A stretch of 32,000 nt of DNA, from the NCBI RefSeq assembly GCF_000400465.1, contig NW_008806275.1, positions 30,001 to 62,000 on the forward strand, given 5' to 3'. A model generated the notes under the pieces. It worked only from the letters and a program-made list of their open reading frames with translations. It was not told where the DNA came from and made no database searches. Shown piece by piece: positions 1 to 17,661 of the stretch. The position numbers and the translations under genes are program-made. The stretch is from Wallemia ichthyophaga EXF-994 (Eukaryota > Fungi > Basidiomycota). The first letter of the stretch is position 1, and each line of letters starts with the position of its first letter.

Positions 1-498
1 AGCATTGTGGTCCAGTCGGTCTGTCTAAAGATCAAGTACCAAACAATATGGAGATTGATGCAATACTTGGATCAGCTTCCGCCATCGTTGCAGGATATGA
101 CACTGATAGGTTAGTAAAATCCAAGTTCGGTGAAAACTGGTGTGTCAAAATCAATGATAAATATGTCTATCCTCGTCAATGGGTTAAGCTGGAAGGAAAC
201 GCTGTCGAAAGTACGTGGAGAAGTGTGCTCTTTGCTCTGATCAGTACTCTGATGATCTACCCCGGTATTTCTTTGGTAAGTGGATTGAATGTATTTGGAA
301 AGAGCTCTTACATGTGTGTAGACTCAACTCAGAAAATGCTTCAGCAAAGCGTACGACAGACTTGAGGTTGTTGATGCAATTCAAGCATTGCTGAGGGAAG
401 GACTTGTTCATGGGAGAATGCACAATGCAGAAGGAGCACCAAAGTTACAAAGTTTGGCAGATGAAAGTGAAATGTGCTATTATCAAAGCTTTATATAA
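1..498 (+). CDS. 3' end of a gene entering from the left; probable TFIIIC B-block-binding subunit (Tfc3/Sfc3-like) C-terminal winged-helix region
   Basis: Frame is open from the window start. Removing intron 276-321 (GTAAGT...TAG, 46 nt) gives ...YPRQWVKLEGNAVESTWRSVLFALISTLMIYPGISL|TQLRKCFSKAYDRLEVVDAIQALLREGLV...YQSFI* with TAA at 496-498. The PGI...YDR.EV.D.I..L...G pattern resembles fungal Tfc3/Sfc3 C-termini; this family call is from memory. Confidence 0.55.
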
Positions 499-536
499 TT
501 AATTGTACAACATCAATACATATGTAGTTATCTTTA

Positions 537-1625
537 TCATTCGTCGATTTGATGATAATGTTGTGTTTCAGATTCTTTGTTTGCAATTTGTTTGACCCTT
601 TGATGTTAATTAGCTTTGAAAGAATGGACTTGAGATGTTACCTTTTCGCTAATCTTTGATCTTCCCTCAGATCGATCATTGATATGTTCACGCTACAGCC
701 ACTGTATGGACATATCTTTGCCTGACCAAGAAGATATTCTTTAATTGCATTGAAAGAATAAGAATGCTTGCATTTGTCACTGATTTTTTGGTTAGCTGAA
801 CTTTGCACCATGGAAGGGAAACTGACGAAGTGTACGGGTTTTCAAACAAGCAAAGAGTGATCGGATCATTGAAGTTCTGGCGTATACTTCCAATTTCAAC
901 GTCAGAGTCATCATCATCTTCATCATCACTCTCTGAAATTATGATTAGCACGAGGAGAGCACGAATTGACCCAAACAAACCTTTTGGAATGAGTTTTCGA
1001 ATGCTTGGTACAACCTCTTCCGGCTTAGAAACAGCCTACTCAATGTTAATGAATTGACGCGTTGTGACGCGTTTGTGACGTACCCAAATGGAATTGTAGT
1101 AACTCGAAAACTTATCACTATCGCCGTACTTTTGACGTGATGTTTTGTTATTATAACTATGCATAAGATTGCTCAGTTTCTGTCTGTAAAGAGTCTCTGG
1201 TTTAACCTTTGACATGTTAGCACGTTTTGCTAATAACCACGAGACACTCACAATTTCAGCTTCCTGCTCAATATCATCGATAAAGTCGCTCGCGATGGAT
1301 TGCTTTAGTTGAGTGCGATTTTCCAAGTCAACTAAAGACCTCATGTTGCTATCCGCTGTCCCTTCGAGCTGGCGTCTGTTCAGCTATTTTGCAATCAGAC
1401 ATAGTGACTAACTCTATCCCAGTCGCCATTTGGTTCGTACTGCTTGCAGTACTGTATTTGGGTTACGAGATCGATGACATTGTCGCATGCAGCATCAGTG
1501 GGAAGTCTTTTCCAAAGTGAGTTCAGGCTCTTGATTGAGCTTCTATCATTACGTCCTATATTGGTGTCCTCGTCATAGTCGACGCTCATCGTTGTCAGAA
1601 ACTTCTCTTTAAACTCAACTTCCAT
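537..1625 (-). CDS. NSE2: Nse2/Mms21 SP-RING SUMO E3 ligase of the Smc5/6 complex
   Basis: Splicing introns 1083-1036, one near 980-930, 826-780, 641-598 and one near 1410-1370 gives ...YYNSIW|[10 protein letters not shown]...[82 protein letters not shown]...DE*. This has the acidic tract and C-x-H...CP-x2-GC SP-RING of Mms21. Start is ATG 1625 or ATG 1589. Confidence 0.85.
1055..1082. repeat. Tandem 10-bp repeat TGACGCGTT(G/T) with two ACGCGT (MCB) cores inside an NSE2 intron
   Basis: Sequence tgacgcgttg tgacgcgttt gtgacgta; ACGCGT at 1057-1062 and 1067-1072, within intron 1083-1036. Confidence 0.6.
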
Positions 1626-1634
1626 CACAGGAAG

Positions 1635-2214
1635 ATGTCACTTGCAAATTCATTCTTGAGGTCTTTCGCTTCATTGAATCTACGTACTCAAGTACACGCT
1701 CATCCTTCAGTCCTTACTCGGCGGTCGATCTCATCCACTGCCACCAACTTTGCTACCTTGAACCAAATCATGAGAGGAGCTCGTAAATCATTCCCCAAGG
1801 TTTCAAAAGCACCAGCATTAGAAAAAAACCCTCAAAAGAAAGGAGTCTGTACCAAAGTTTACACTACTAAGCCCAAGAAACCAAATTCAGCTATCCGTAA
1901 AGTAGCACGTGTAAAGCTTTCGAATGGAAGGGTAGTACGTGCGTACATACCTGGTGAAGGACACAATCTGCAGGAGCATAGTGTGGTTTTGTTGCGCGGT
2001 GGCCGTACGCAAGATCTTCCCGGTGTTCGGTAAGCCAAATATAATCTCAATGATAAACTGACACTCTATCAGATACAAGATTATTAGAGGCGCTTTGGAC
2101 TTCAGCGGTGTCGTCGGTCGTGCTAATGCTAGATCCAAGTATGGTTGTACGTATATATGTAACACTAGATATTTCACTAATAGCACAACAGCTAAAAAAC
2201 CAAAAGAAATTTAA
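1635..2214 (+). CDS. MRPS12: Mitochondrial ribosomal protein S12 (uS12m)
   Basis: Contains [30 protein letters not shown] and [14 protein letters not shown]|[13 protein letters not shown]...RSKYGSKKPKEI*. The N-terminus is Arg/Ser-rich and presequence-like. Introns at 2030-2072 and 2147-2191. Confidence 0.97.
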
Positions 2215-2324
2215 TTTCTTAAAACGAATAGATTTAGCAATTTTATTTCTTTGTGTACATTGTGAGAATAGGGGTCAATTGACACTAGACCCTCCATCAG
2301 CAACCATCACAAAGGTAATCCAAA

Positions 2325-3162
2325 ATGAATAAGGAGACGTTGATAGCTAATGCAATATCGTCGAAGATTCACAAATTCAATATTTCGTGGATAGTTTATA
2401 CATGCTACATAGAAGATCTGTTCTTTCGAGGCGTCCTGAATCAAAGACTATTATTGCGAAACTTTGTTGAGACTTTCAGGAAGTTCAGTGCTGAATACGA
2501 CTCTGAATACAAAAGTGGACAACTGTCGCCATTTGTCGTTAATATCGTTCAAAATTTGATGTTCAGAATCAATAAGACTAGTAAAGTCATACAATTAGAA
2601 AGTCTTACCAACTATTCTGGTAGGGAGCCAGTTGCCGCAGGCGTATCCACATCTAATCCTCTCAATGAAACTCAATATACAACTCGAAACATAAAATTCG
2701 AGGCGTGTCATCAGTATTTTACAGATAACATTGCTTATCCGTATCCTTCGGACAAATCAGAAAGAGAATATCTTGCAGCTAAAGATGGTGCTAGCTTGAA
2801 ACAAGTATGTAGGCCGGTGACTCTTTTTTTTACATTCTAAAGAATTGCAGGTAGACCAATGGTTCACAAATCATCGCAAGCGTTCTGGATGGAACCATAT
2901 TTGCAACATCGCCGAGAGCAAAGAGACGGCATCAAAGCTCGTCAAGTTAGTTTTATCAGGCCCCGACCAAACTATGTTGCCAAATTCTGTGACATCGATT
3001 GTTGCTACATATATCCAACGTGGGACGAATAACCCAAGGAATATACCAAGCGAAGGACTTAAGAACGCAATTGATCAATTAAGTAATCGCTACCCATTTT
3101 TGTCAAAGAAGCGTAAAAGGGACGAAGGAAGTTCTAACTACTTGAGTACCTTCTTCCAATAA
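2325..3162 (+). CDS. TALE-class (HD1/Sxi1/bE-like) homeodomain protein, putative mating-type transcription factor, about 263 aa
   Basis: Intron 2805-2850 (GTATGT...CAG, 46 nt) joins FEACHQYFTDNIAYPYPSDKSEREYLAAKDGASLKQ to VDQWFTNHRKRSGW. It has the TALE PYP loop and a WF-x-N-x-R-x-R-SGW helix-3 ending typical of basidiomycete HD1 proteins. KKRKR at 3106-3120 is a likely NLS. Confidence 0.85.
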
Positions 3163-3725
3163 TAGGGAAAAGAACATCAGAATGGTGAATATGTGTAATG
3201 ATCTATGTCTAGCGTAAGGTATTTGTCCCGAGCTTTTGTGTATACGTTTTTAATTTATGTTATTGTTTAGTGAATAAAGGGGAAAGAGATACAACAAAAA
3301 GAAGAAAAAGGAAATTGCGAGAGCAGAGGCGGGTGGGGTGGAGAGGGCTGCGAGGCTGTGGGCGGTTTGTTAGAGCGAAAGCAGGGAGCGAGAGGAGACG
3401 TACGACGGGGTAGCTGATGGAGATGAGATGAGGGAGAGATAAATGCAGTATATTTGATTTTCTATTAGATGTAATGTGATGAAGTCATGTGTTCATGTGT
3501 TATTTGATTTGCTAATTGATTTGATTTGATTTGATGAAATATTTCGTGAGAGCGTATATATTGTGCTGTGATTAGAAGAAGCAGATGAATTAGATGTAGG
3601 AGAAGAAGGAAAGTGATGAATCCATGGTGATCTTGTTTTTGTGTGTTGCGCTCATTGTGCTCGCTGTATTCCTGTGCTCGCAATACTCGCAATGCAACCA
3701 AGAAAAGGGGCCACACATCCACTAC

Positions 3726-6700
3726 CTACTTACTCGACTGCGACGAGTGTTTTCTCTGATGCTGAGGCTTTTCCTTGCCTACCTTTTTCTTGGAGCCCGA
3801 CTTGCCCTTGCTGGTGTCGCTACCGACGCTTGCCGATCTGCGTTTTTCGTGGTTAGCTGGTGTGTTTAGGATGTGTGGCGTTTTCGGTAAGCTTGCGATT
3901 TCGCCAAGGGAAGAAGGTTGCCAAGAGTATTTCTTCCTAGCAGGGAGGAGGGTATGAGAGGGAGAGGGAGAGGGAGAGTGAGTGTGAGCACCGCTACTGC
4001 CACTGCCACTACCACTCGCGACGCTCCCTAGTGCTGGAAAACCATCATCTAGCGCAAACCCACCCAAATTAGGTTTGAAAGGCGGGTCATCTCTATCGAC
4101 GCCACCCGCGTTGCCCATGCTAACTTTGTCGAGGAGTGGGAGAGGGGTTGGGAGGGACGACGAGGCGTTGGGAATGATGCGCGAGTAAGTACGTCCGCCG
4201 CTGATCGCCTTCTCATATTTGTCGTGCCTATACCTATCCATTTCGCCCTCTCTGTTCCACGTGCCTGTGCCACTGCTCCTGCTTGTGCTGGCGACGCGCG
4301 GCGTCTTGGCAAGTACGCGCGGTGTTGATGGCACTGAGCGCGAGCGGGTGGGCAGAGAGCGCGTGTGAGCAGGGGGAGAGGGGGAGTGGGAGTGTGTGGG
4401 GGAGAGTAGGCGCGAGTGTGTTTCTGTTTCTTGCATGCCTTGCGTATCGACCTGCGCTAATCCATCTCCATTCTCATCCCCTTCTCCCTTTCTGCCTTCC
4501 CGTGTCGCTGAATCGCCTTCTACACTCTCACTCTCACTCTTGTGTCGTGCCACGGCCTGTTTCTGAAGGCGCAGCCACCGTCGGGCGGACATACGCGGCG
4601 GGGGTACGCGCACATCAGCTGCGAGGGTGAGAGCAGAAGTGGTGAGAGTCTCAGGTTTAAGCGAGGGGGTCTGACCGAATGTGTACGTGTAGCGAGGATG
4701 CGATGACGAGAGTGAGGAAGTGAGAGGGGTGAAGCCTAACCCAAGACCTAGAGTAGCGCCGTCGTCTTCATCGCCTTCGCCCACCTCAATCCCACTACCT
4801 TCCTTCGGCGCGTGGGCGGGTGCACTGAGCGTCGACGTCGTCGACAGTGGCGGCGAGTTAGTCGGGGTGTTTGCTTCTGACGGCTGCGTAAATGTCGACG
4901 GCGTGATTTTGATTTGCTGGCCGGCGCCGTTGGTGACGAAAGTCGGTATGCGCATCTGGGCGGGGGTAGGAGTGTGTGTGGTTGTATGAGCGTTTGTGTG
5001 GATGTGACTGTGTGTACCACTCCAGCTCCCGCTCCCCCCTTCCATCTGCTTTTGTATGAGCTGGGCTGGCGACGCGTTGACGCTATTCGCGGTCGTTGCT
5101 GCCGCAGCGACCGCCTCAGCGCTGCTCGATGCCCGCGAGTGCAAGGCAGCGTTAGCGAGGCGGGGTGAATGGCGCAAGGGGGCGGGAATGGGAATGGGTG
5201 GGTGAGATTGAGCGTGCGTGAAAGGTTGAGTATGTGAGTGTGGGTGTGGGTGTGTCCAACCCATCTCCAATTCGCCGTGCTCCGCATGCTCGCAAGCATC
5301 GCCAGTTGCACTCCCACTCACGCTCGCATCGGCATATGGCCCTACAACACTTGGGATGGTCGCCTTTAGGTGGTGCTTAGGGGCGTACTTGCGCTCGTGC
5401 ACACGCGCCAACCACGCCGGACCCACGTTAGCACCCGAACTAGCGCGTCGTGGTATACTGCTGCTCATATCCGCCCGCGTACTCTCATCCGACACGAGAT
5501 TCTCCGCTTCCCAGAACGCACTACCCAGAGGCTTCGTGTGCGATTGCGGATGCTGGTACATAAGGTGTTCTTCGTGGGCGTTGCGGACGCGTTCGCTCTG
5601 TGCGGCGTTCAGCGCAAGTGAGAGTGCGTGTGCATGTGACGGGGATGAGGAGTGTCTGCGGGGTTGTGCTTGTGTGTGTATATTTTGGTGGGTGTTTTGC
5701 AGTGTGCTTCCATTTGCTCCAGGTGGTGATGATGAAGATAAGGATAACGCAGACACACCGAATCCCGTCATTCCTGTCATCTGCTCACTTGGTTTGCGCG
5801 TGGGGAGGATAGACGATTGTGTTTGCGTCGGTGAGTAGCCGGTATGCACGCCTTGAACGCTTGGTAAAGTAGTTACACCCGGCGGCGGCTGCAGAGTTGG
5901 TCCTAGCGACGGGTTGATGAGTGGGCGTGGTGTGCGCACACCACTGGTGAAAGGTGCAGGCACGAGAGCGTCGTCGCGCTCCTCGCATAGATCTACCAAC
6001 ACTTGCGACGGCAGAGTGTCCACTTTGCCGACAGTCTGAAGCATTCTCGAAGCGCGCATGAACTCGCCGCGAATAGTGTAAAGGCCTGTGGTGGGAGATC
6101 AGAAGACGCAAGTACCGCTATACTCAACCTCACCGTCAGCAGTCACCGTGCGAGCGACGTTGTACGAGGTATCAAAGGGGTCTTCTATCGAGAGGCGATT
6201 TCTGTCTCGGGCAAACTCGCTGGCGCCATCAACCTCTAAATCCTGGACCCAGCCTTTAGCGTCCTTGGAGAGGATGCCGCCCTGGGTTCTAATGGAGATG
6301 ACGTCGTGGGTATAGTTGAAATCCTTGGCGTAGAAGCGGAAGAACTCCCAAAGCAACTCGCCGACCGACTGGGTGTTGGCAGAAGACCACTCCTGGCGAA
6401 GGAGAGCGACGTCGTCGAAAAAGTAGATGTTCCTACCGTCGTAGCTAGCGGACTCGGGAGAGACGGGTCTGATGGGGGGGATGCGCTGTAAATTGGGGAG
6501 GACGGGAGGCTGCTTGACGTGAGTGAGGAAGAAAATGACAAGGAGAGTGAACCCGTAGCTGGAGAGTGTGCCTCTATACGCGCTATTAATTTTGCGCCTC
6601 TTTGACCAGACTTTAATGAAGAGAACGAGAGTGCGGAGGCGTGGAGGGTCGACAGAAGCGTAGCCGAGGAGAAGGCGGGTGTTCTCCAAGGCCAGCTGGC

Positions 6701-7127
6701 CGCCAAAGCCGATATCACAGGCAATGCCATATGGGAGAGAAGGCGTGGGGGAGAGGGTGAGCTTGATGATGGGGATGCGTGCTTTTGGGAGAGGCTTGAC
6801 AAGGAAGTTGGTCTCGTGCCTGATGAGGTCGCCGACGATAGTAGTTAGCTCGGCAGAGGACAGTGGCTCGCTGGCTGGGTCGAGAATACACTGCAAATCC
6901 ATGTCGGAGTTCCTGAGTGCAAAACCATTGGCCATAGACCCAAAGGCGGTGAGGCGGGCACCAGGGCTGACTCGCACGATAATCCTCTCTAAGAGGAGCC
7001 TTGTTTGTTCTTTTATCGCATACTCTTCTGCCGTGGGGAGGAGTGGGAGGATAAAGCTGAAAAGACAGCCAGTGAGATCCTGCGACAGCGCTGAGCGCAT
7101 GGCACTTGAACCCCAGTTATTTGTCAT
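3726..7127 (-). CDS. CID1: Cid1/TENT-family non-canonical poly(A)/poly(U) polymerase with a roughly 750 aa low-complexity C-terminal tail (about 1117 aa in total)
   Basis: Contains FGSMANGFALRNSDMDL (GS and DxD motifs), GIACDIGFG, LVLFIKVWSKRRKIN, GTLSSYGFTLLVIFFL and IEDPFDTSYNVARTV. Intron 6133-6086 fuses track ORFs 6099..7199 and 3726..6059 (TADG|LYTIRGEFMRASRML). The first ATG is at 7127; the track start at 7199 is TTG. An extra 3' exon cannot be excluded. Confidence 0.9.
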
Positions 7128-7215
7128 TTTTTGGGCGTCGTCGGCGTGTTTTAAGAGATGGAAGAGATGGTCGACGAGGAGATGGACGTGAACAACCAAG
7201 AGTGAAATAGCGTTA

Positions 7216-7941
7216 ATGTCGGCAGAGTGTGGGTGTTGGTGGATCCAGCCGTGTTATTGGCTGATTATTCTATAGCGTTTTTCAGCCAGTCGATGGGATC
7301 GTTTAGGTGGTTGGGGCAGTCGCAGGGACAAGAGCAGTCACAAACAGAGGCACAGCCACAGACACAACCCCCGCAATCGCTCTACGCCACTCTCTCAAGT
7401 TCCATCTCAGACTACATTCCCCTCAACTCGCAGCACAACTCAAACGAGCAAGAAGCGTATTTTGCACTCAACCGCTGGGAGCGCTTCTTGGGCTTTGTTA
7501 TCTGCCTCATTGGCAGCGCTGCCTGCTTTCTCCTCTCCTTTTTCCTCTTTCTCCCTATACTCCCGATACGGCCCCACAAGTTTGCGCTAGCGTTTAGCAT
7601 GGGCAGTGTGTTGGTGATGGCTGCGTGGGTTGCTTTGGTTCTACAAACACTTTCTCTAACTTGCGCTCAGTTTCGCTCTCCTCGTTGGGCCGCTCAACCA
7701 CCTAAAACACCTCCTCAGCAGGGAGCGTATCGTGTTCTCTGTCTCATACCTCTCCTCACTCTCGCTCACCATATATTTTGCACTCATCGCCAAATCCTAT
7801 ATCGGCGTCCTCGTCGCTGGTCTCATCCAACTCGCGGCTCTCCTCACTTATATCTTCCAATACTTCCCGGGCGGTTTGACGACCCTCAAATTCGGCGGAA
7901 GAATGGCTTTCAGGGGTGCAAGCAATATCCTCCCTATCTAA
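7216..7941 (+). CDS. SFT2: Sft2/Got1-family Golgi tetraspan membrane protein
   Basis: MSAES|FFSQSMGSFRW (intron 7229-7275), then LNRWERFLGFVICLIGSAACF, PHKFALAFSMGS, a second intron near 7626-7670, and GPLNHLKHLLSRER...YFPGGLTTLKFG. These are Sft2 family motifs. Confidence 0.9.
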
Positions 7942-8175
7942 TCAGCATTTCTGTATAGTACATGTTACGTGTTTGGCGTTTTGATTGAGTGTCTGGCGTG
8001 ATTTGCGTAGTTTACATGTAAAAGGGGTGATTGGCGCGATATGCGCAAATAGCGCGAAATATAGCATGTTTAGCATTTTTCATCCTTTTTTTTCACTCTC
8101 AACCATCACATCTGCTCCCTCTTAGCCTTGAGTCTATCTGGATCCTGGAATATGTCAGCTAGCACACTCACCACA

Positions 8176-8820
8176 CTATCCACCCACAAATCCCAGCGCA
8201 TAATCCTTCAACTGCTCATCATTACCCCGCTTATACGGATGAAGATCGTTGAATGACGTGCGCGCGTGTACCGATGAATTTCCGTGGCTGGTATCTGCTG
8301 TCGATTGGCTGACGTGGCTATGGCTTGTGTTTGGGGAGAGTGTGCCGATACTGCTGTCTGTATCGTAGTGTTGTTGGTGGTGGTGGTGGTGGTTATCCTG
8401 ATCATCCTGATCCTCCTCTTCCAGCTTCTGCTCGCCAACATCCTCCAACTGCTTATCCATAAACTTATCCTTATCCTTAATCTTGTTTTTATTCTTATCT
8501 CCATTCTTACCCTTCTCTACATCTCTATTCTCACCACGTCTAAATAGTCTGACTAGCCTTTTCCCAGCATCAACAGCGACATCCCCGAGATCGACTACGT
8601 TCTTCTCCTGTGATTGCTCCATCTCCTTCCACTCCTGCGCCGTAAACGTTTTTACGAGGCTACCATCTGAATTTCTGTGTATATTACTAGCATTTCCACT
8701 GTTACCGCCGCCATTAAAAAAGCTAGAGCGCGCTGCAACACCGAGAGTGATAGAATTGCGCCGTGGCATCGACGCCGGCCGCTGTGGAAGTGGGGCGAAC
8801 GACACGCCATCAGCCGACAT
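8176..8820 (-). CDS. Uncharacterised hydrophilic protein (VSFAPLP...RRNSITLGVAARS motif; acidic and His-rich C-terminus)
   Basis: 214-codon open frame with protein-like composition, located between SFT2 and IZH3. A possible upstream exon from an ATG near 9020 could not be spliced unambiguously. Confidence 0.6.
   Translation of the reverse strand: MSADGVSFAPLPQRPASMPRRNSITLGVAARSSFFNGGGNSGNASNIHRNSDGSLVKTFTAQEWKEMEQSQEKNVVDLGDVAVDAGKRLVRLFRRGENRDVEKGKNGDKNKNKIKDKDKFMDKQLEDVGEQKLEEEDQDDQDNHHHHHQQHYDTDSSIGTLSPNTSHSHVSQSTADTSHGNSSVHARTSFNDLHPYKRGNDEQLKDYALGFVGG
8375..8393 (-). repeat. Trinucleotide microsatellite encoding a His run
   Basis: (TGG)n on the plus strand gives HHHHH in ORF 8176..8820. 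Confidence 0.85.
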
Positions 8821-9297
8821 TTTACGCGGGGCTGTGGCTGTAGCTAGGGCATACAGGGTGAGTCATCTGCTTCTACATCGCAGCCAAACACCCTCACTCA
8901 CACTCACCCCCCTCCTTGGAATTTCGCAGTATCGATGGTGTCTTGGGCGCGCCCAGCTCACGCGCTTCTGGTGGCGGTTCTAATTTATTGGCGAATTCAT
9001 CCTGCGCTGACAAATCGCTCATTGATCATGGATGTAGCGGAGTAAGTCGAGTGGAGTGCGCGTTTTATTTCGTGTGTAATCTCGTGCGTGCTTATATCCA
9101 TATCCATCATCTTATTAGTATTTATCTCTCTTCAATTACCTTTCTCCTCATTGGTCACTCCCCCTCGGCCTGCATGTGGGGTCCCGGATCTAACGCGGCT
9201 CACACGGCCATCACTCTAGCACCTCACACAAACTAAAAATTAAAAATCAAATATCTATAAAGTCATTAACTCGTCGCTGCATTCTCTCGCAAGGTTT

Positions 9298-10776
9298 TTA
9301 CGACGATGCAAAGAGATATCGCGACGCGTGCATGCTCACAATAGCTCTGTAATGCAAAAAGATAGCAGCAGCGACGGCGATATGCCAAGCATTATGGCTC
9401 GCGAAAGCGAAATCGAAGCGGCCGGGTGCGAGGCACTCAGGTATCTGGAGGGCGTAAACGACGAGCCCTACGACGTAAAAGAGGAGGGACGGTATAAGGG
9501 GTGCGAGGAAGGAAAGGGTGTTAGCGAGACTATGATAGTGAACCATAGCCAGTATAGGCGCTGCACCGCAAATGGCCATATACACGAAGAACCCAATCCT
9601 ATACCCGCGGCTCTCCTTCCTGTTGAACGACTCGGTGAAAGGGAGGTAGCTGCCTGCTATGGCATTGGAGATGATGAAGGTGAGGAGTGTGTTGCGTGTC
9701 ACGTCGTCACAGTATAGCCCGTAGTACGTCACGCCCGTCACACTCGCTGTGATGAGCGAACTGATACCGACGTAGTCAACACATGCGTAGTGTTCGAAGA
9801 TGCGCTTATCTGCACACCCAGCGTGGATGTGCCACAGACTGGAGAACACCAAGCACTTTAGCGCGGCGAGGAGAAAACCCATCATCACCAAATTGTCAGA
9901 CCACGTGCTGTCGTGTGCCACCCACGCAGGATGAGGCGCAGCGATGTGATAGGCGAAAAGCAGAGCCACTCCAACAGCAGCCCACAGGTGCGTCTGTACG
10001 CTGCAGCGGTGTTAGAGGTGAGTGTTTAAAGAGCGCTTCACCTACTTAACCGTCTCGTTGTGCCATGTAAATGCAGATCGGAATAACTCGCTCTTGTTGT
10101 TGTGTATCGGTATGAATCGGTATCCAGTGAGTATATGTTCGTTGTTCTTCCACGCATCGGGCAGCTCACTGAACTGGATAAGACGTGCACCATTCTGCGC
10201 GCGCGCTAAGGCCCACTCGATAGCTGTGCGTGCCGAGTCGAAGCCGTGCTCGACCATCTGCGCTTTAGTATGTACCTCAGCCTCGACGAGCCGACGGATC
10301 TCGTCCCACTTCTCCAGCACCACCGCGGCTTGTTCCGCAGTAAAGGTGGATGTAGAAGCAGACGCAGAAGCGGATGCCGCTATCACCGATTTCAGTCGCT
10401 CGCTCACTGCCTCCATCTGCACCTGCAGATGCACCGAGGGGAGCTGACGGTGAAGTTTCTCTGTATCCATACTGCGCAATTCGCTTATCATTCGCAGAAG
10501 CTCGCGCCCCATCTCGAGAGAACGCTTCGACGTCGCGTTGGTGTCGATCAACTGCCTCACTCTGTCCTCCATTTCGTAGAAACCCCGCTGGAGTCGCTCG
10601 CCGGCACTCCACACCGCCTCCACCGTCCCATGCAGGTCGAGATAGTCGAGTGCGCTGCTCGTCGTTGGTAAATGCGAGGCTATTTCCGTCGGCAGAAAAC
10701 TTAGACTGGGATTACTCGAATGCGACGATTGCCAACTTTGTGAATTGCGCCGTTTGCTGTCTGCATCTTGATTCAT
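9298..10776 (-). CDS. IZH3: PAQR/hemolysin-III family membrane receptor (Izh3-like) with a long soluble N-terminus
   Basis: Intron 10045-10001 joins ELPDAWKNNEHILTGYRFIP...FTWHNETV to NVQTHLW. It also contains SSLWHIHAGC, DYVGISSLI and PECLAPGRFDFAFASHNAWH, which carry the conserved PAQR His/Asp metal motifs. Confidence 0.9.
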
Positions 10777-10937
10777 TTCAATCCAGTGCGAGTTTTCGCT
10801 CGACTACCAATATTGATAAGATTCGATTAAAGTTGTCATCTCGGCGGGCGTGGTATAAAAATCGGTGAAAATTATTAATTTATAACAAAGTTTATGTGTG
10901 CTGAAAATTATATTAGATTACAAATGCTGCGTGATTC

Positions 10938-12066
10938 CTATGATAGCTTCTTGGTAAGCTCTGGGACGACTTGGAAAAGATCTCCAACGAGGCCAACATC
11001 AGCGATCTGGAATATTGGTGCTTCTGGGTCCTTTGGTTGTGTTGTGAGTGGTTGAGTACATGCATAACACTACTGACTCACCTTATTCACTGCCACAATC
11101 AGCTTCGAGTCTTTCATTCCAGCCAGATGCTGGATGGCGCCTGAAATACCAATAGCCATGTAAAGTTCCTGTTTGAGTGGCCGTAACAGTCAGCAGCAAC
11201 ACACAAACCACTTTTTCACTCACCGGCGCGACAATCTTACCCGTCTGGCCTACTTGTAGCGAGTTATCAGCATAGCCACTATCGACAGCGGCTCTCGAAG
11301 CGCCGATAGCAGCGCCTAGGGAGTCAGCGAGTGGTTCAATAATGGAACCAAAGTTCTCTGCCGACTTGAGTGCTCTACCACCCGACACGACTCTGGCCGC
11401 GCTGCCCAAATCAGGGCGAGCAGTAAGAGTCATTTCCTCCGAAACGTGTGGAGCGTGGTCTTTCACTTGCACTGGGGCTACCTCCTCCACAACCACCTGG
11501 TCACTGCTAGATGAGTCTGCGCCATCGAAAGCTGTAGCTCTGACCGAGACGACTTTCCTGCTTTCACCACTCTTCACGGTGCTGATGGCATTACCTGCGT
11601 AAATGCCCCTCGTAAACACCTCTCCGCCGTCTTCGAGAGAGAGTATATCAGCAATGATGGATGTATCGAGTAGGGCAGCTGCGCGCGGGAGAACGTTCTT
11701 CCCGACAGCTGTGTGCGCGGCGAACAGGTGAGTGAGTGAGTCGTCTTTCTCCATGAGCGTCTTGAGTAGTGGTGCGAGTGTGCTGGGTGGATGGTGGTCG
11801 TATTGCTCGCTGTGTGCCACTAACAGTCTGCTAAGAGGGAGTCTTCGGGCGGAGTCAATGGCACTCGAAATGCTCTCGGACCCGGCTATCACTCCAACCA
11901 CCTTGCCATTCACCTTCTGAGCGGCCGTCAGCGCCGACAGCGTACCAGCATTCAGCTTCCCGTCGCGGTGCTCCAAGTAGAGAAGCGCATCGCGTGTGGG
12001 TGGAGTGGTGCTGAGTGGGCGTGCTGTGCGTGGTGCTCTTGTCGCTGCTCTTGCCAATCTAAACAT
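10938..12066 (-). CDS. AIM45: Electron transfer flavoprotein alpha subunit, mitochondrial
   Basis: Contains [48 protein letters not shown]|[29 protein letters not shown]|[30 protein letters not shown]. Two 3' introns; presequence-like N-terminus. Confidence 0.97.
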
Positions 12067-12753
12067 CGCCGTCGAGTTGCAAGAGACGCAGCGGGATAAG
12101 TTGATGGGAATTATCTGTGATTCTCGTGAGTGGATTAGGCGCTGTAATTATTCTATATCCCATTAGCCACGTGCCATCTGAGCAAATTTCAAATCTCGGA
12201 TCAAATCAAATCAAATTGAAGATAAAAGCGTCGGTCAACGTAATAGGGTGTTGTAGAATGTCATGGCCATATCATTGGTAGTACTTGCCATATCCATACA
12301 CCGGCAGATGCTGTCAATTCACTTACCTCCACATGACTCGGTCAAGTGTATCTGACAGCTGCGGTTGGTGCTTAAGCGGGGCTAAATTCATAGCGGCAAT
12401 CTCGGAGGTTTTTACAGTGGTTCTCACTGATCAATACCATTCATGTTCCCTCCGCTGCCGAAGGATGCATGCGTCATTTATCCACCATACGTCATACGTC
12501 CTCAACTTTCAACGTTGTCAGAGAAGTGTATGCCAAAGCTAGCACAAGGCACACGCGGCACATGTCGCACACGGAACCTTACGACGTGAGACAGTCTCAG
12601 CTGAATTCGAAATTGAATTTTAATTTGACTCAGAATTCGTTCACTGGCACGAAGTTAAATATGCACTGGCCCTCGACTGCGTGCCTTAATTGAAGCCTAT
12701 ATTAAGATGAGCTTGGCTAGCTCTCTTTTTACACCACAATCACAACCGAAAGT

Positions 12754-14365
12754 ATGTCCAATTCGCACAACACAGTACAGGATCTCGCGGTGCACGCACC
12801 TAATGGTGGACCACCAATCACTATCGAGCAGCTGCGCAAAGATCAAGACAATAATACCAGAGACAAATATCCGAGACGTTTGATCGTCTGCTGCGACGGA
12901 ACCTGGCAGGATGGTTTGGCTACCAAGGCTGAGGAGGAGTACACCAATATCCTCAGACTTACGAGAGCCATTAGGCAGGTGAGTTGCGGGTGGTCGAGGC
13001 GATGTCTTGGTGTTGTGTGTTTTGTGCCATGACGCACGGCGCACTATGCACTATGCATATGCATATGCACTCATCAACACGCTCAAATTCACCCCACCCA
13101 GGAAACAAAGGACGCAAAACCTGACACACCATCCACAGGAAGACAGAAGACACTTTCCGCCAACCCCGCAAATCTGCCACTATGTTAGGTGAGTTAGCCG
13201 CGTTACTGCCGCCATTGCTCAGCTGACGTCTTGCTTTTACAGTGGTGTCGGCACTGGCTGGTCACTCTCTGAACAGCTTATTGGCGGTGCCACAGGCAAT
13301 ACTCTCGGTATTAAAATCAGAGATGCGTACGCGTTCCTGTCGCAAAACTACTGCGACGGTGATGAAATATTTCTCTTTGGATTCAGCAGAGGTGCATTCA
13401 CGGCAAGGACACTCGGCGCGCTGATCAACGACATTGGTATTCTCAACAACAAGGAGATGGAGCATTTCTTCGAAATCTTCAAAGCCTATCACGACCGCAA
13501 CGACAGTGGGAACCCAAAGAAGGCGGAGAAGGCGCGCAATTACCTCGAGCCATGGCTGTTGCGCAACCCTGCCAACAACCGCCACAAGGGGAGGCAATTT
13601 ATTATCAAGTGTATTGGTGTGTTCGACACAGTCGGTGCACTCGGTGTGCCCTCGCTGAGCTCCTCCTTCTTCCCCAAGATGAAAAGCGAGGAGAACTACA
13701 TGGGCTTCCCTGACACGGTGCTTGGTGACAAGGTTGAGCATTGCTACCATGCACTCAGCCTGCACGAGAATCGCCCCAACTTTGTCGACACGAGGCTCGA
13801 GGTGAAAAAGGAGAACCTAGCCAAGGGGCAGCACTGCAAGCAGGTGTGGTTCACAGGGTGCCACTCGGACATCGGTGGTAGTTACAGAGAACACGAGCTG
13901 AGTGACCTCACGCTTATTTGGATGTGCGCATCCATTGAACACCTCCTCTTGCTCGACATAGAGTATCTCAGAAGCATCCCTAATCCGATGGAGGGCTGGG
14001 GCAAGCAGCAGCCGCACGACAGCCGCACGGGTATCTTCACTTTAGGCATGCCTATCAAGAGAAAACCAGTACTCGAATTGAGCACCACAGAGAGATTGCA
14101 CCCAAGTGTCCTCGAAAACGATTGCAAACTCGCTAAACCAATTCAGGAGAAGATCGACAAAGAGCCGCAACTTATCGCATCGCTCCTCCCACTCGAGGAG
14201 CAGTTCAGAGCCGAATGGAAGCAGACTCATGACGCGGAGGACCGCAAGAAAGGGAGCAAGTACCACACAAGCAAGGATAAGAAGAACTTTGACGACGAGG
14301 AGAATGAGTCGACAATGAAGAAGTATTGGGATATGATACCTAAGCCGTGGAACATCTTCTCTTAA
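12754..14365 (+). CDS. DUF2235 (Tle1-like) alpha/beta hydrolase
   Basis: Contains RRLIVCCDGTWQDG, then intron 12979-13138, EDRRHFPPTPQICHYVS|GVGTG, DAYAFLSQNYCDGDEIFLFGFSRGAFTAR, IGVFDTVGALG, HALSLHENR and QVWFTGCHSDIGG. Confidence 0.9.
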
Positions 14366-14491
14366 TGAGTATAATGGGAAATGAGAAATTAGAAAAACAA
14401 ATAAATAAATAAACAGCTAATGCGCTATCATATGTTAAACCAGCCAAATAATACATTGTAATACCATATACACGTCTTCTCCACACAACCA

Positions 14492-15343
14492 ATGACACTC
14501 GCAGAGTTACTGCCAGAGAGAAGCAGAGTGACGGTGGTAAAGGATGAGCCAGGATGCTCGGGGCTGTTTGTGCTGCTGGATGAGCTCAAGCGGGCGCAGG
14601 CAGTGCAGCGGCCGGTGAGTATCGTATCAACGGAGCATACCAAGGAGCATTGGCAGGCTTGTGCGAAGAAGTTGGTGGGAAGGTGTATTTAGAGAGCGTG
14701 GATTATTCTAACCATAAAATCACGCTTCAGGGATCGCCGCTGAGTGCAGCCGTCGGATTCATCGACGGATTCAGCCAGCTTGCAGACGCGGGCGAAAGCG
14801 CACTAGAAGCGTTGCTGGCGCAGACGGAACAATCCATACGCAATCACAGCCACAGTCACAGTCACAGTACACCGCCACTGCTGCTTATCGACGATCTAGC
14901 GTGTTTGAAGTGGCTCGGTATCGCTGACAGCGCGGTGGAAGGCTTCGTCAAGGGGCTGCTCAAGGTGGCTGAGGAGGTGGGTGTTTGTTGGGTAGTGGCT
15001 CAAGCGTGTTGCTCACGCGTACACCGATACAGCTCGACGTGGATATAGTTGCGATAGTCCACTCTCCACACACAGCAACGCTTCTCGAAGCACGCGCTAC
15101 GCTCATCATAGTCACAAAACCTCTGTCTACAGGCGCAAGCGCAGAAGTTACTGGTCAAGTGGGTAGACAGGGCTCCGATCGCTAGTAATCAGCCTCACAC
15201 ACATGCAGATAAACGCTTATCGCGGCCCGCTGTGGGACTCTCTCGCTGCTAATGGCGGATGGAACGGCTGGGAGAGGCAGCTTCACTTGACTGACTCGAG
15301 CATACATGTTTTTGCAAAAGGTCTCGGACGCAGTGTGATTTGA
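14492..15343 (+). CDS. ELP6: Elongator complex subunit Elp6-like RecA-fold protein
   Basis: Four exons reconstruct ...EHWQACAKKL|GSPLSAAVGFIDG...LLLIDDLACLKWLG...|LDVDIVAIVH...TKPLSTGASAEVTGQ|INAYRGP...LTDSSIHVFAKGLGRSVI*. The LIDDL, PL-x-TG-x-S-x-x-V-x-G and terminal F-x-KG motifs match Elp6. Confidence 0.75.
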
Positions 15344-15451
15344 AGTGTTTGTACAAATATATTTTATTTCCGTCTATCGTTCCGCGCCCGTTCTTTGGTT
15401 CAACGACAATTGCAGCGCGATAAAGAAATCATTCACGCACTGAGCGATTGG

Positions 15452-17661
15452 ATGGTCAGGAAACACGTCAGCACTTCCACACTCAACAAATCTCAAAGCG
15501 ACACGGCTTTTCATTATCGCAGGCGCCGTAGCAGCACCTCCATCAACAAATTACGCACTCTATCCACTCTGCGAGCCATGGAGAGATGGGACGATCGCAG
15601 CGGCAACTGGGCGATGGGCGGTACAGACACGGGCGGCCGTTCCTCGTCTTCGGATAGCAGCCAGTCTTATGGTAGCCACAGTTCTGACGGCCGAGCAGCC
15701 GGCAGTGTAGCAACTCGCCCGCAAAAGAGCAGGAGATTGAACGAACACCCACCTACCACCAACAGCGTGCAGCATGCAGAGACGGTGTTGCTATCTGTGG
15801 CGATAACAATTGCTGGCTACAAGCTTATTTCGGAGTTTGGTGAGCATGGCGTTGTCCTCCCAGCAGCTGTCGTTGTAGCAGCTCTACTTTTGCTGTTGTT
15901 GCTCAATACGCGTCGGTGCGGACACGTCTACGGCACAGCTGCCAACGAGTACAGAGAGACGGCTGATCCGGGTCTTGCCGTGGCTCTCCTCCTCCTCCCC
16001 CTCATGGCGCTCAGCGCGCTTTACGCATCACTCTCGAGCAAGCGCGATGGACACACGGCAGCGTGGGCATCTGCGTATAGCTTCGTCGCTGATCCGCAGG
16101 ATGACCTCATCGTGTCGAGACGCTCCCTTGTCGGTCTCTCCCTCGCTATGTCTTGCACTGCTGCCGCGCATATTATCTGCACGAACCTGCAAATCACTCA
16201 GAGTGGTAGCGGTGGCAGGCGGTTCCTCACTTTCACCCTCTTTAGCACGCTCGTTGGTGTGGTTATTACGTTTGCTGTTGATACAGTCAGGTCGACGTCA
16301 CACTCACACGGTGCCTTCTTCGCCGATCTTGACAGCCTCGAGTGCTTTTCGGCTACCGTGTTCTTCCAGTTCACGCTGCTCGTTATCTTGCGTCTCGGTA
16401 AAAAAGGGTTTACTATAGGCGAGCTCGTCGTGAGCAGCGGGCTGGGCACGGGGCTATTTGTCGAGGTGCTTAATCTTACTAGATGGAAGGTGGGTTTGTA
16501 GCTTTTGGTGCACTCGCTCCTTCTCACGCCTTCTCAGATCGGCATTTTGCCCATACTCAAGACTTACAGACTACCTACACCTCTCGTCGTTCTACAGCTT
16601 GCTCTCATTCCGGGCTCCTTTCTTATCGGCTTCCTTCTCTCACCGCTGCTCGTGCTGAGTCGGAATATATCGCAGAAACCGCTGCATAGACTGCGCTGGC
16701 CCGAGCAGAAAGAAATGCACAGACGCATCCTCGCTTTCTCCTTCTACATCCTCTGTGCTGTGCTGGAGGTAAGTCTGGTAGGAATGTGGCTAGTGTGGGT
16801 GCTCAATTGGAAGAACCCATTCGAGCTAGTGAAGGAGATAATGTGGAACGACGGGAGATATGTCAGTCGACTGTGTCTGGTAGGGTACTGGATTGCGCTG
16901 GTTGCCGTCAGCCTGCTCGGCTGGGTCAAGCAGCTCAGTCTGGTGCGCAACCCCATCCAGTTTAAGCACATTCACACTCCGGATGCTAGAGTCGACAGCG
17001 GGGAGATGGTCAAGAGGCTTGTCTCTGCGGCGAACAAAACCGCGGCTGGTATGACACTCAATGGTCGCAGGAAATACTTTCATCTTCTTCTCGCTGCGAT
17101 TATCGTACCTGGCGTGGTGGTTGATGTGAGTATGGTGTGTCACATAGTATTAACAAAAACTCTAATACACAGCAGCCATTTATCACCCATCTCGCTGCGA
17201 GTATCGCATTTGGGATATTCATATTCATCGAATATATGCGATATTTCGCACTATACCCACTTTCAGCCAAGATACACGTCTTTATGAGTGAATTCATCGA
17301 CGAGAAAGACAGCGGCGCGGCTATTCTCAGTCACTTCTACTTGCTGACGGGATCGATGATGTGTCTGTGGATGGAAAATGGGCGTACGATGGATAATCTC
17401 AGCGGAGTATTAGTGCTCGGCGTGGGAGATGCGATGGCGAGTATTGTGGGGAAGAAATGGGGGCGACACCGTTGGACAGACGCGTCAAATAAGAGCATCG
17501 AAGGAACACTTGGATTTGCACTGAGCATGCTAGCCGTCACATCATTCAAGTCTTCTCAAGTAATACCGATACTGGTGACAGCACTGATGGAGGCGTACAG
17601 CGTACAGAATGATAACTTGATAATAGGATTTATATTCTACAGTACTTGTATATTATTTTAA
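15452..17661 (+). CDS. SEC59: Dolichol kinase (CTP-dependent)
   Basis: Polytopic hydrophobic protein with GFTIGEL, LNGRRKYFHLL, FIDEKDSGAAILSHFYLLTG, GVLVLGVGDAMASIVGKKWGRHRW, KSIEGT and QNDNL motifs. Introns near 16489-16538 and 17128-17173. Confidence 0.93.

What the first reader, a model, noticed from the sequence alone, without database searches (positions are those of the whole stretch)
2325..3162. Lone HD1-type mating homeodomain gene with no divergent HD2 partner
Seen: a two-exon TALE homeodomain gene with PYP and WFTNHRKRSGW. Only 110 bp upstream is the stop codon of MRPS12 on the same strand, and the downstream neighbour is convergent CID1, so no HD2 gene fits beside it. Established: basidiomycete HD loci (Ustilago bE/bW, Coprinopsis A locus) usually carry a divergent HD1-HD2 pair, whereas Cryptococcus neoformans MATalpha carries only SXI1. 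Inference: this is either one idiomorph of a single-HD mating system or an HD1 gene uncoupled from mating specificity in a fungus with cryptic sex.
Basis: partly seen in the sequence, partly recalled or inferred. Interest (0 to 1): 0.7.

Follow-up and report, generated by a model that had tools for sequence, protein, structure and literature searches.

The report
Wallemia SXI1 idiomorph; partner HD2 found
The lone homeodomain gene is the already-described SXI1 (HD1) mating-type gene of the salt-loving fungus Wallemia ichthyophaga, and strains of the other mating type, reported to have no homeodomain gene, carry an unannotated HD2 partner gene at the same spot.

Summary
Window 2325-3162 (+) is a two-exon, 263-aa TALE homeodomain gene, 110 bp after MRPS12 and convergent with CID1. 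The window is W. ichthyophaga EXF-994, scaffold KE007225.1. The gene is the published WiSxi1 (EOR03899) at one edge of the published ~22-kb invertible MAT locus, so the feature itself is already known.

New here: the mating-type-specific DNA in the window is only 2249-3261. In all four assemblies of the opposite ("inverted") type, that spot next to MRPS12 holds 1.3 kb that the literature calls "unidentifiable function" and "lacking any HD gene". It encodes an intact five-exon, 337-aa protein with a typical non-TALE homeodomain, which passes Pfam's Homeodomain threshold. W. mellicola has an orthologue at the same position with the same four introns. A spliced transcript contig from a third Wallemia confirms the model exactly. 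dN/dS is 0.32 overall and 0.08 in the homeodomain. The intron between homeodomain positions 48 and 49 is shared with an agaricomycete HD2 gene.

Wallemia therefore most likely has a Cryptococcus-like system, with HD1 in one MAT allele and HD2 in the other. Heterodimer function is inferred, not shown.

The parts
1..3261 (.). Right-hand end of the ~22-kb invertible MAT segment (reference/SXI1 orientation). Bases 1-2248 are shared with the opposite mating type at 98.7% identity.
   Evidence: L002 8528-10777 matches window 1-2248; the shared downstream flank starts at 3262, and the alt-type junction sequence equals the start of the paper's 'INVERTED REGION' alignment.
1635..2214 (+). MRPS12 (mitochondrial ribosomal protein S12), 163 aa, two introns. 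It is the last gene shared by both mating types before the HD idiomorph.
   Evidence: P0007, Pfam Ribosom_S12_S23.
2215..2324 (+). 110-bp MRPS12-SXI1 intergenic region, the presumed SXI1 promoter. It holds two HMG-box core motifs (ACAAAG) at 2249-2254 (-) and 2309-2314 (+).
   Evidence: This is a weak lead only, because motif density across the window is ordinary.
2249..3261 (.). SXI1 idiomorph: 1013 bp present only in the SXI1 mating type, with no nucleotide similarity to the 1345-bp HD2 idiomorph of the other type.
   Evidence: Only 3 variable sites among 8 SXI1-type loci.
2325..2804 (+). SXI1 (HD1) exon 1, codons 1-160: helical N-terminal region plus helices 1-2 of the TALE homeodomain.
2805..2850 (+). 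SXI1 intron (46 nt, GTATGT...CAG), located inside the homeodomain just before VDQWF. The position is conserved in W. mellicola SXI1.
2851..3162 (+). SXI1 exon 2, codons 161-263 plus stop: recognition helix WFTNHRKRSGWN and a C-terminal tail with a KKRKRD basic cluster.
2718..2883 (+). Stretch matched by Pfam Homeobox_KN (residues 132-171), interrupted by the intron.
   Evidence: PDB best matches are PBX1, Extradenticle and Meis, all TALE proteins.
3262..17124 (.). Downstream flank shared by both mating types (99.76% identity). Genes: CID1, GOT1/SFT2-like, an unnamed gene, HlyIII/IZH, ETF-alpha, a DUF2235/Tle1-like hydrolase, ELP6 and a dolichol-kinase-like gene.
3726..7127 (-). CID1-family poly(A) polymerase, 1117 aa, convergent with SXI1. 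One 48-nt intron at 6086-6133.
   Evidence: P0178 = EOR03900.1.
3300..17300 (.). GC-rich block (GC 0.50-0.61, GC3 0.53-0.71, against 0.36-0.50 elsewhere) that begins at the MAT edge.

Best explanation
Window 2325-3162 is SXI1, the HD1-class (TALE) homeodomain gene of one of the two mating-type alleles of Wallemia ichthyophaga. It occupies a 1-kb idiomorph (2249-3261) at the edge of a ~22-kb segment. That segment is inverted between the mating types and also carries the allele-specific STE3 receptor and pheromone genes, so the system is bipolar with fused P/R and HD functions.

The opposite allele is not HD-less, as has been published. At the equivalent place next to MRPS12 it carries an unannotated five-exon gene for an HD2-class (typical, non-TALE) homeodomain protein.

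Proposed mechanism (inferred from Cryptococcus Sxi1alpha/Sxi2a, Ustilago bE/bW and Coprinopsis HD1/HD2):
- A haploid cell makes only one partner.
- After pheromone/receptor-mediated fusion of an SXI1 cell with an HD2 cell, the two proteins pair through their helical N-terminal regions.
- The heterodimer acts as the transcription factor that signals the fused, compatible state and switches on sexual development.

The orientations (MRPS12 ->, HD2 <-, SXI1 ->) fit reciprocal loss from an ancestral divergent HD2-HD1 pair. Both idiomorphs and the same boundary occur in W. mellicola, so the dimorphism predates the split of the two species.

Shown here: gene structures, domain classes, allele-specific placement, conservation, purifying selection, and expression with correct splicing in one Wallemia. 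Inferred: heterodimerisation, the regulatory role, and actual mating.
For: SXI1 class:
- TALE class: Pfam Homeobox_KN 1.1e-10. PDB best hits are PBX1, Exd and Meis, ungapped through the TALE loop.
- HD1 architecture: in a search of 1.84 billion representatives, the hits whose alignment extends through the N-terminal region are agaricomycete HD1 proteins. P0031 is named 'HD1 protein' of Volvariella. P0036 (Tulosesus) carries Mating_N, Homeobox_KN and Mating_C. Pairwise BLASTP gives 2e-18 and 3e-16 over residues 29/44-177, including WFTxxRKRxGWN.

Mating-type specificity:
- Homology with alt-type contigs stops at window 2248 on the left and resumes at 3262.
- L002/L003 carry the published alt-specific pheromone precursor, and L017 carries STE3 (Pfam 2e-52).
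- This agrees with Gostincar 2019.

HD2 in the other allele:
- Gene model at L002 12001-10805 (-), 337 aa, four GT..AG introns.
- Pfam Homeodomain: 23.3 bits for W. ichthyophaga, 27.6 for W. mellicola, 27.4 for P0014, against a gathering score of 22.9.
- A profile of the two proteins hits only non-TALE homeodomains in the PDB (DUX4 4e-5, Lhx4), ungapped.
- Intact in all four alt-type assemblies, with 0-3 nt differences.
- W. mellicola orthologue at the same place in three alt-type assemblies: 42% identity, same four intron positions.
- Logan contig L008 (SRR23314750) is an intron-less HD2-MRPS12-Nse contig. Its gaps against W. mellicola DNA fall on my four predicted introns, and its 313-aa ORF has exactly the predicted structure.
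- dN/dS is 0.32 overall and 0.077 in the homeodomain.
- The intron between homeodomain positions 48 and 49 is shared with the HD2 gene of the canonical Tulosesus HD1/HD2 pair. A Wallemia HD2 homeodomain profile scores that HD2 at 20.9 bits against 2.9 bits for its HD1.

Trans-specific boundary: it lies about 30 bp after the MRPS12 stop in both species.
Against: - No experiment shows mating, heterodimerisation or any phenotype in any Wallemia. W. ichthyophaga has no observed sexual cycle and was reported to lack several meiosis genes.
- There is no transcript evidence for HD2 in W. ichthyophaga itself. The spliced contig comes from an unidentified relative of W. mellicola.
- The W. ichthyophaga HD2 passes the Pfam threshold only narrowly (23.3 against 22.9 bits).
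- All three Wallemia HD2 proteins have F instead of the near-invariant W at homeodomain position 48.
- The SXI1 N-terminus does not hit Pfam Mating_N.
- I could not scan whole genomes, so strict absence of HD2 from SXI1-type strains, and of SXI1 from HD2-type strains, rests on the locus and on the 2019 paper.
- No formal phylogeny with Cup9/Tos8, bE or Sxi1 was built.
- Divergence between mating types inside the inverted segment is only 0.3-1.4%. That is odd for an ancient non-recombining region and needs gene conversion or a similar process to explain it.
Confidence: 0.8

Rival explanations
1. Published view: only one Wallemia mating type has an HD gene (SXI1). The other has none, so compatibility does not rely on an HD1/HD2 pair, and SXI1 acts alone or with an unlinked partner.
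For: Stated in Gostincar 2019, Sun et al. 2019 and Coelho et al. 2025. GenBank annotations call no gene in the 1.3-kb replacement sequence. The HD2 proteins are absent from a 15-billion-protein collection.
Against: The replacement sequence encodes an intact, spliced, conserved homeodomain protein under purifying selection. It is present in all four alt-type W. ichthyophaga assemblies and in three alt-type W. mellicola assemblies, and a spliced transcript contig exists in a third species. The earlier negative result is explained by four short introns, two of which split the homeodomain, including the WF/FQN motif.
Confidence: 0.05
2. Relic system: W. ichthyophaga is effectively asexual. SXI1 and HD2 are leftovers that no longer control mating, being either uncoupled, co-opted for another role, or decaying.
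For: [quoted passage not shown] There is no expression evidence for HD2 in this species. HD2 carries the unusual F48.
Against: - Both genes are intact in every strain examined.
- F48 is shared by three species, so it is not recent decay.
- dN/dS is well below 1.
- Both idiomorphs have been kept since before the split of W. ichthyophaga and W. mellicola.
- Both types co-occur, and linkage disequilibrium decays within about 1.3 kb, which indicates recombination.
Confidence: 0.12
3. SXI1 is a general TALE transcription factor of the Cup9/Tos8 or Pbx/Meis kind that merely lies near MAT.
For: Most of the 171 database hits cover only the homeodomain and include non-fungal TALE proteins from a diatom and from ichthyosporeans. 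Pfam Mating_N is not hit.
Against: The gene is present or absent by mating type, and its 1-kb idiomorph has exact boundaries. It is replaced by an HD2-class gene. The only hits that align across the N-terminal region are HD1 mating proteins. Zajc 2013 found four other HD genes in the genome and found only this one similar to mating HDs.
Confidence: 0.03

Closest known systems
Cryptococcus neoformans/gattii MAT: SXI1alpha (HD1) in MATalpha, SXI2a (HD2) in MATa
   Same: Each MAT allele has one HD gene, of opposite class in the two alleles. The HD gene is physically linked to STE3 and pheromone genes (bipolar). CID1 and ETF1 homologues lie beside it; that these two are Cryptococcus MAT genes is my recollection and was not checked here. 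A GC-rich region adjoins MAT (Cryptococcus side: PMC3390403).
   Different: The Wallemia locus is about 22 kb and is a single inversion, against more than 100 kb with many rearrangements. Shared genes inside it differ by only 0.3-1.4% between types. Protein similarity is confined to the homeodomain level. Wallemiomycotina is a separate subphylum, so the arrangement is probably convergent. Function is untested.
Trichosporonales fused MAT loci (Sun et al. 2019, PMC6730849)
   Same: Fused P/R-HD locus with SXI1 in one allele and SXI2 in the other. That paper names Wallemia as the apparent exception, and this work removes the exception.
   Different: Different lineage, locus size and gene content. 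The Trichosporonales alleles were recognised from annotation, whereas the Wallemia HD2 was missed.
Canonical divergent HD1-HD2 pairs (Ustilago maydis bE/bW; Coprinopsis/Tulosesus A locus, e.g. L020)
   Same: The same two protein classes: a TALE HD1 with an N-terminal region and the WFTxxRKRxGWN motif, and a non-TALE HD2 with an intron between homeodomain positions 48 and 49. The Wallemia gene orientations fit descent from such a pair.
   Different: In the canonical loci both genes are in every allele, and many alleles exist with hypervariable N-termini. In Wallemia each allele keeps one gene and each gene is almost invariant within its type (3 variable sites in 1013 bp; 0-3 in 1197 bp).
Saccharomyces cerevisiae MATalpha2 (TALE-like) / MATa1 (typical HD)
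   Same: Two idiomorphs each contribute one homeodomain protein of a different class, and the heterodimer marks the fused or diploid state (textbook knowledge).
   Different: Ascomycete cassette system with silent copies and switching. There is no linked receptor or pheromone genes.
Non-mating fungal TALE factors (Cup9/Tos8)
   Same: TALE homeodomain fold.
   Different: Those are not mating-type-specific. This gene is present or absent by mating type and shares N-terminal architecture with HD1 proteins.

Membership tests
Basidiomycete HD1 (Sxi1/bE-type) mating homeodomain proteins | TALE homeodomain with a three-residue extension between helices 1 and 2 | tested here: met
   Pfam Homeobox_KN 41.6 bits (gathering score 24), while PF00046 is below threshold. 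Ungapped alignment with PBX1 through the YFxxxxxxPYPS loop.
Basidiomycete HD1 (Sxi1/bE-type) mating homeodomain proteins | N-terminal region of about 110-130 aa ahead of the homeodomain, related to that of other HD1 proteins (the dimerisation/specificity region) | tested here: inconclusive
   Collinear alignment from residue 29/44 to 177 with the Volvariella 'HD1 protein' and the Tulosesus HD1 (BLASTP 2e-18 and 3e-16; phmmer 4.7e-9 and 2e-8 library-wide). These two carry Pfam Mating_N, but SXI1 itself does not hit Mating_N at E<=1.
Basidiomycete HD1 (Sxi1/bE-type) mating homeodomain proteins | Encoded in the MAT locus and specific to a mating type | tested here: met
   The idiomorph is 2249-3261. 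It is absent from four alt-type assemblies at this locus and lies at the edge of the inverted segment that carries STE3 and pheromone alleles (paper).
Basidiomycete HD1 (Sxi1/bE-type) mating homeodomain proteins | Divergently transcribed HD2 gene in the same allele | tested here: not met
   Only 110 bp separate MRPS12 from the ATG, and no second homeodomain exists in the 32 kb. This is the same exception as in Cryptococcus and Trichosporonales.
Basidiomycete HD1 (Sxi1/bE-type) mating homeodomain proteins | Heterodimerises with HD2 of the other mating type and controls post-fusion development | not testable with these tools
   Needs two-hybrid or co-IP, multimer modelling, and crosses or deletions.
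Basidiomycete HD2 (Sxi2/bW-type) proteins (for the newly found gene, L002 12001-10805) | Typical 60-residue, non-TALE homeodomain | tested here: met
   Pfam PF00046 at 23.3, 27.6 and 27.4 bits (gathering score 22.9), each above the Homeobox_KN score. Ungapped alignment to DUX4 and Lhx4 homeodomains. Position 48 is F, not W.
Basidiomycete HD2 (Sxi2/bW-type) proteins (for the newly found gene, L002 12001-10805) | Specific relationship to HD2 genes of other basidiomycetes rather than to any other homeodomain | tested here: inconclusive
   The phase-0 intron between homeodomain positions 48 and 49 is shared with Tulosesus HD2, and a second intron lies within one codon of the same position. The Wallemia HD2 profile scores Tulosesus HD2 at 20.9 bits against 2.9 bits for its HD1. 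That is one comparator only, tblastn was not significant, and no tree was built.
Basidiomycete HD2 (Sxi2/bW-type) proteins (for the newly found gene, L002 12001-10805) | A real, maintained, expressed gene located in MAT | tested here: met
   Intact in four W. ichthyophaga and three W. mellicola alt-type assemblies. A spliced transcript contig exists in a third Wallemia. dN/dS is 0.32 overall and 0.077 in the homeodomain. It lies between MRPS12 and the PCI/BAP31 flank. Expression in W. ichthyophaga itself was not shown.
Cryptococcus-type bipolar MAT with one HD gene per allele | HD1 only in one allele and HD2 only in the other, linked to P/R genes | tested here: met
   At locus level. HD2 and STE3 lie on one contig about 20 kb apart (L002/L017, SPOQ01000008.1). 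Genome-wide absence of the other class was not tested.
Non-mating TALE factors (Cup9/Tos8) | Present in all strains irrespective of mating type | tested here: not met
   Missing from the locus in all four alt-type assemblies. The paper reports no SXI1 homologue in those genomes.

The most novel reading that the evidence does not exclude
Wallemia mating types are defined by reciprocal single homeodomain genes, SXI1/HD1 in one allele and a previously overlooked HD2 in the other. Both have been kept since before W. ichthyophaga and W. mellicola diverged. The genus is therefore not an HD-independent exception. It is an independent (Wallemiomycotina) origin of the Cryptococcus/Trichosporonales-type arrangement, embedded in a small inversion whose shared genes are kept nearly identical between mating types, probably by gene conversion, and bordered by a GC-rich, possibly recombination-hot flank.
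Probability: 0.7. Interest if true: 0.7.

Novelty: new member of a known kind. Interest (0 to 1): 0.6.

Why it matters
The gene in the window is itself already described, so on its own the finding is ordinary.

What matters is what following it up showed. Three papers (2019, 2019, 2025) treat Wallemia as the one basidiomycete lineage in which a mating type has no HD gene, and one suggests that mating there may not depend on HD compatibility. The sequence evidence here shows that the "unidentifiable" replacement DNA is a conserved HD2 gene, expressed in at least one Wallemia species.

- This restores the universal HD1/HD2 logic for the genus.
- It adds an apparently independent case of reciprocal HD loss after P/R-HD fusion.
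- It gives a concrete protein pair to test (interaction, co-expression, crosses) in fungi whose sexual cycle has never been seen.
- It is a reminder that short-intron genes with split motifs are missed by BLAST-based MAT surveys.

Tried and rejected
- Word-indexed protein search with SXI1 found only the protein itself. The HD2 profile found only one relative. The index is too coarse for these fast-evolving proteins.
I reached the contigs through protein ids instead.
- Supplementary File S1 of Gostincar 2019 is stored cut, before the SXI1 end of the alignment. It served only to confirm the junction sequence and the STE3/HMG order. None of its STE3, HMG or BAP31 sequences lie in the window or in L001.
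- AlphaFold2 single-sequence models of SXI1 (P0001) and HD2 (P0014) were useless (mean pLDDT 38.0 and 34.6), so no fold search was run.
- tblastn of Wallemia HD2 against the Tulosesus HD locus was not significant (E 0.4-0.8) because introns split the homeodomain. I replaced it with intron-position and profile comparisons.
- No inverted repeat of 11 nt or more at the inversion breakpoints.
- No tRNA, no Rfam family, and only one trivial tandem repeat in the window.
- SRR23314750 is not mentioned in the paper library, so the species of the transcript contig is unknown.
- The ACAAAG promoter motif is not enriched window-wide and is kept only as a weak lead.
- An assembly chimera as the cause of the GC shift is rejected: twelve contigs carry the exact SXI1 protein, and all seven loci shown have SXI1 followed by CID1.

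Full report
**What is in the window.** Bases 2325-3162 (+) hold a two-exon gene. Exon 1 is 2325-2804, the intron is 46 nt (2805-2850, GTATGT...CAG) and exon 2 is 2851-3162. The 263-aa product contains YPYPS and VDQWFTNHRKRSGWN. It matches Pfam Homeobox_KN (TALE) at E=1.1e-10, 41.6 bits against a gathering score of 24. Its best solved-structure relatives are PBX1, Extradenticle and Meis, aligned without a gap through the TALE loop. MRPS12 (1635-2214, +) ends 110 bp upstream. A CID1-family poly(A) polymerase (3726-7127, -, 1117 aa) is convergent downstream. Six-frame motif scans, and tblastn with the HD2 proteins described below, find no second homeodomain in the 32 kb.

**Where it comes from and what is already known.** The product is identical to EOR03899.1 / P0012 of Wallemia ichthyophaga. 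The window is base-for-base identical to scaffold KE007225.1 of strain EXF-994 over the overlap. Zajc et al. 2013 already named this protein a hypothetical WiSxi1. Gostincar et al. 2019 described a putative MAT locus in 21 strains. It contains SXI1, an HMG gene, STE3 and pheromone genes, and it is inverted in four strains (1, 2, 15, 16). [quoted passage not shown] Sun et al. 2019 and Coelho et al. [quoted passage not shown] The lone SXI1 is thus a known feature. The open point is the other allele.

**Delimiting the idiomorph.** I reached contigs of other strains through the MRPS12 and CID1 proteins.
- Two contigs (L002, L003) carry the published alt-specific pheromone precursor MEPETLKN...CIIV, so they belong to the inverted type.
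- Their homology with the window (98.7%) stops at window 2248, which is 34 bp after the MRPS12 stop.
- From the other side, alt-type contigs L016/L017 match window 3262-17124 at 99.76%. They then diverge into the exact sequence with which the paper's "INVERTED REGION" alignment begins.
- The mating-type-specific DNA in the window is therefore 2249-3261: 1013 bp holding SXI1 with 76 bp upstream and 99 bp downstream.
- Among eight SXI1-type loci, standing for thirteen contigs, it has only three variable sites, all in one strain, and one amino-acid change, G106S.
- In the alt contig SPOQ01000008.1 the inverted segment spans about 22.4 kb, with STE3 (Pfam 2e-52) near the far end.

**The other allele has an HD2 gene.** In the alt type, MRPS12 is followed by 1345 bp (L002 10778-12122) with no called gene, and then by the PCI-domain and BAP31 genes of the upstream flank.
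- The minus strand of this stretch holds a five-exon gene (ATG at 12001, stop at 10805). Its four introns are 46, 48, 45 and 44 nt, all GT..AG, and it encodes 337 aa.
- The homeodomain, ...HRKQ|VFREILPELYKWNHRPSVSDRNYLSR|ITGLNRKCLDNF|FQNTRNRRGQ..., is split by introns. That explains why BLAST-based searches and the annotation pipeline missed it.
- It passes Pfam Homeodomain (PF00046: 23.3 bits against a gathering score of 22.9, E=5.7e-5), and that score is above its Homeobox_KN score.
- A profile of it aligns without gaps to typical non-TALE homeodomains in the PDB (DUX4 4e-5, Lhx4).
- The gene is intact in all four alt-type assemblies, with 0-3 nucleotide differences and one polymorphism, E203K.
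- Neither this protein nor its W. mellicola orthologue exists in a 15-billion-protein collection, so it is unannotated.

**Conservation, expression and selection.**
- W. mellicola shows the same two arrangements. The reference strain (L007) has MRPS12-SXI1-CID1. Three other assemblies (L004-L006) have MRPS12, a 1.3-kb gap, then PCI and BAP31.
- That gap encodes a 313-aa orthologue with 42% identity overall and 82% in the homeodomain, with introns at the same four positions. Its PF00046 score is 27.6 bits.
- The idiomorph boundary again lies about 30 bp after the MRPS12 stop.
- The only database relative of the HD2 profile is P0014, a 313-aa ORF on Logan contig SRR23314750_301 (L008).
- That contig carries HD2, MRPS12 and the zf-Nse gene without introns, and the second MRPS12 intron appears to be retained. 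Its gaps relative to W. mellicola DNA coincide with all four predicted HD2 introns.
- It is therefore transcript-derived. It confirms both expression and the exact splice pattern in a third Wallemia.
- Between that species and W. mellicola, dN/dS is 0.32 overall and 0.077 in the homeodomain.

**Class assignment.**
- SXI1: a phmmer scan of 1.84 billion representatives gave 171 hits, most confined to the homeodomain. The hits that align through the N-terminal region are basidiomycete proteins with the same layout. They include the Volvariella "HD1 protein" and the Tulosesus HD1, which carry Pfam Mating_N, Homeobox_KN and (for Tulosesus) Mating_C. Pairwise E-values are 2e-18 and 3e-16, and the alignments share WFTxxRKRxGWN.
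- HD2: the canonical Tulosesus HD locus (L020) has a divergent HD2 gene. Its homeodomain is interrupted exactly between positions 48 and 49 (EVW|FQNHRSR), as in Wallemia (DNF|FQNTRNR). A second intron lies within one codon of the Wallemia one.
- A Wallemia HD2 homeodomain profile scores the Tulosesus HD2 at 20.9 bits and its HD1 at 2.9 bits.
- This is one comparator and not a phylogeny, so I rate specific HD2 membership as likely rather than proven.

**How it most likely works.** The system mirrors Cryptococcus (SXI1alpha/SXI2a) and Trichosporonales: one HD gene per MAT allele, of opposite classes, linked to the pheromone/receptor genes. A haploid cell makes only one partner. After fusion of opposite types, an SXI1-HD2 heterodimer would form through the helical N-terminal regions and switch on post-fusion development. 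This step is inferred from the named model systems and is not shown here. The orientations (MRPS12 ->, HD2 <-, SXI1 ->) are what reciprocal deletion from an ancestral divergent HD2-HD1 pair would leave. In the window that is 110 bp between MRPS12 and SXI1, and in the alt type 121 bp between the HD2 ATG and the PCI gene. Both idiomorphs and the same boundary occur in two species whose synonymous sites are saturated, so the dimorphism is old and has been maintained.

**Caveats.**
- No Wallemia has been seen to mate.
- EXF-994 was reported to lack several meiosis genes.
- HD2 expression is not shown in W. ichthyophaga itself.
- The Pfam score in that species is marginal.
- Position 48 of the HD2 homeodomain is F in all three species.
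- I could not scan whole genomes for second copies.
- Single-sequence structure models were too poor to use.

**Verdict.** The finding as written is real and correctly interpreted, but already published. Its follow-up yields a new member of a known kind: the missing HD2 of Wallemia. This contradicts a repeated statement in the literature and makes the HD-compatibility question directly testable.

Noticed in passing
window 3300-17300: A 14-kb GC-rich block (GC 0.50-0.61) starts at the MAT/inversion edge (3262). GC3 of CID1, HlyIII, ETF-alpha, DUF2235 and the membrane ORFs is 0.53-0.71, against 0.36-0.50 for MRPS12, SXI1, CDC24, GlyRS and the histidine kinase. The effect is weak in W. mellicola (L007) and absent on the BAP31 side (L002). 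It resembles the GC-rich recombination hot spots that flank Cryptococcus MAT (PMC3390403), so GC-biased gene conversion is a possible cause.
   Followed up: partly
window 1-2248; L013/L002 left 10 kb; L004 vs L007: Inside the inverted segment the two mating types differ by only 0.3-1.4%, rising towards the HD gene. Within-type diversity is at most 0.18%. W. mellicola shows 1.3%. Yet the idiomorphs and their boundary are shared across species. The shared genes in the inversion must be homogenised in some way, perhaps by gene conversion or double crossovers. This is unexplained.
   Followed up: partly
window 2249-2254 (-), 2309-2314 (+); L007 10660; L002 12065; L004 11820; L008 37: Every SXI1 and HD2 upstream region examined, in three species, contains at least one ACAAAG HMG-box core, and the 110-bp SXI1 promoter has two. 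The window-wide density is ordinary (25 found, 22 expected). This is a weak hint of Prf1-like (HMG) control of the HD genes.
   Followed up: partly
L002 12001-10805 (-); L004 11790-10663 (-); L008 72-1013: All three Wallemia HD2 proteins have phenylalanine instead of the nearly invariant tryptophan at homeodomain position 48 (FFQN instead of WFQN).
   Followed up: no
window 17717-20850 (+), 24922-29307+ (+), 30633-31978 (-): Signalling genes lie 15-29 kb beyond the MAT edge: CDC24 (CDC24 calponin, RhoGEF, PH and PB1 domains), a large hybrid histidine kinase (GAF, HisKA, HATPase_c) and a protein kinase with MAPKK-like sequence. They are outside the mating-type-specific region. Any link to mating was not examined.
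   Followed up: no
L009-L016 gene tables; P0009; P0002: Several GenBank gene models around the locus are fusions or mis-starts: ETF-alpha+HlyIII (796 aa), ELP6+dolichol kinase+CDC24 (1925 aa), W. hederae MRPS12+SXI1 (441 aa), and a 196-aa MRPS12 model in alt-type strains. These compact-genome annotations need care.
   Followed up: no
window 3950-3990: A (GAGGGA)n-like low-complexity run sits inside the CID1 C-terminal coding region. The short-read contig of strain E3P86 (L001) ends exactly here, so in that assembly SXI1 lies at a contig end.
   Followed up: yes
window 12700-14400 (+): A eukaryotic DUF2235 / T6SS Tle1-like alpha/beta-hydrolase domain gene (Pfam 8e-36) lies in the flank. It is an ordinary fungal family member as far as seen.
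   Followed up: no
L017 14385-14887 (-): In the alt-type allele, between the CID1-side breakpoint and STE3, ORF fragments of a membrane protein lie in a stretch with no called gene. They were not identified here.
   Followed up: no
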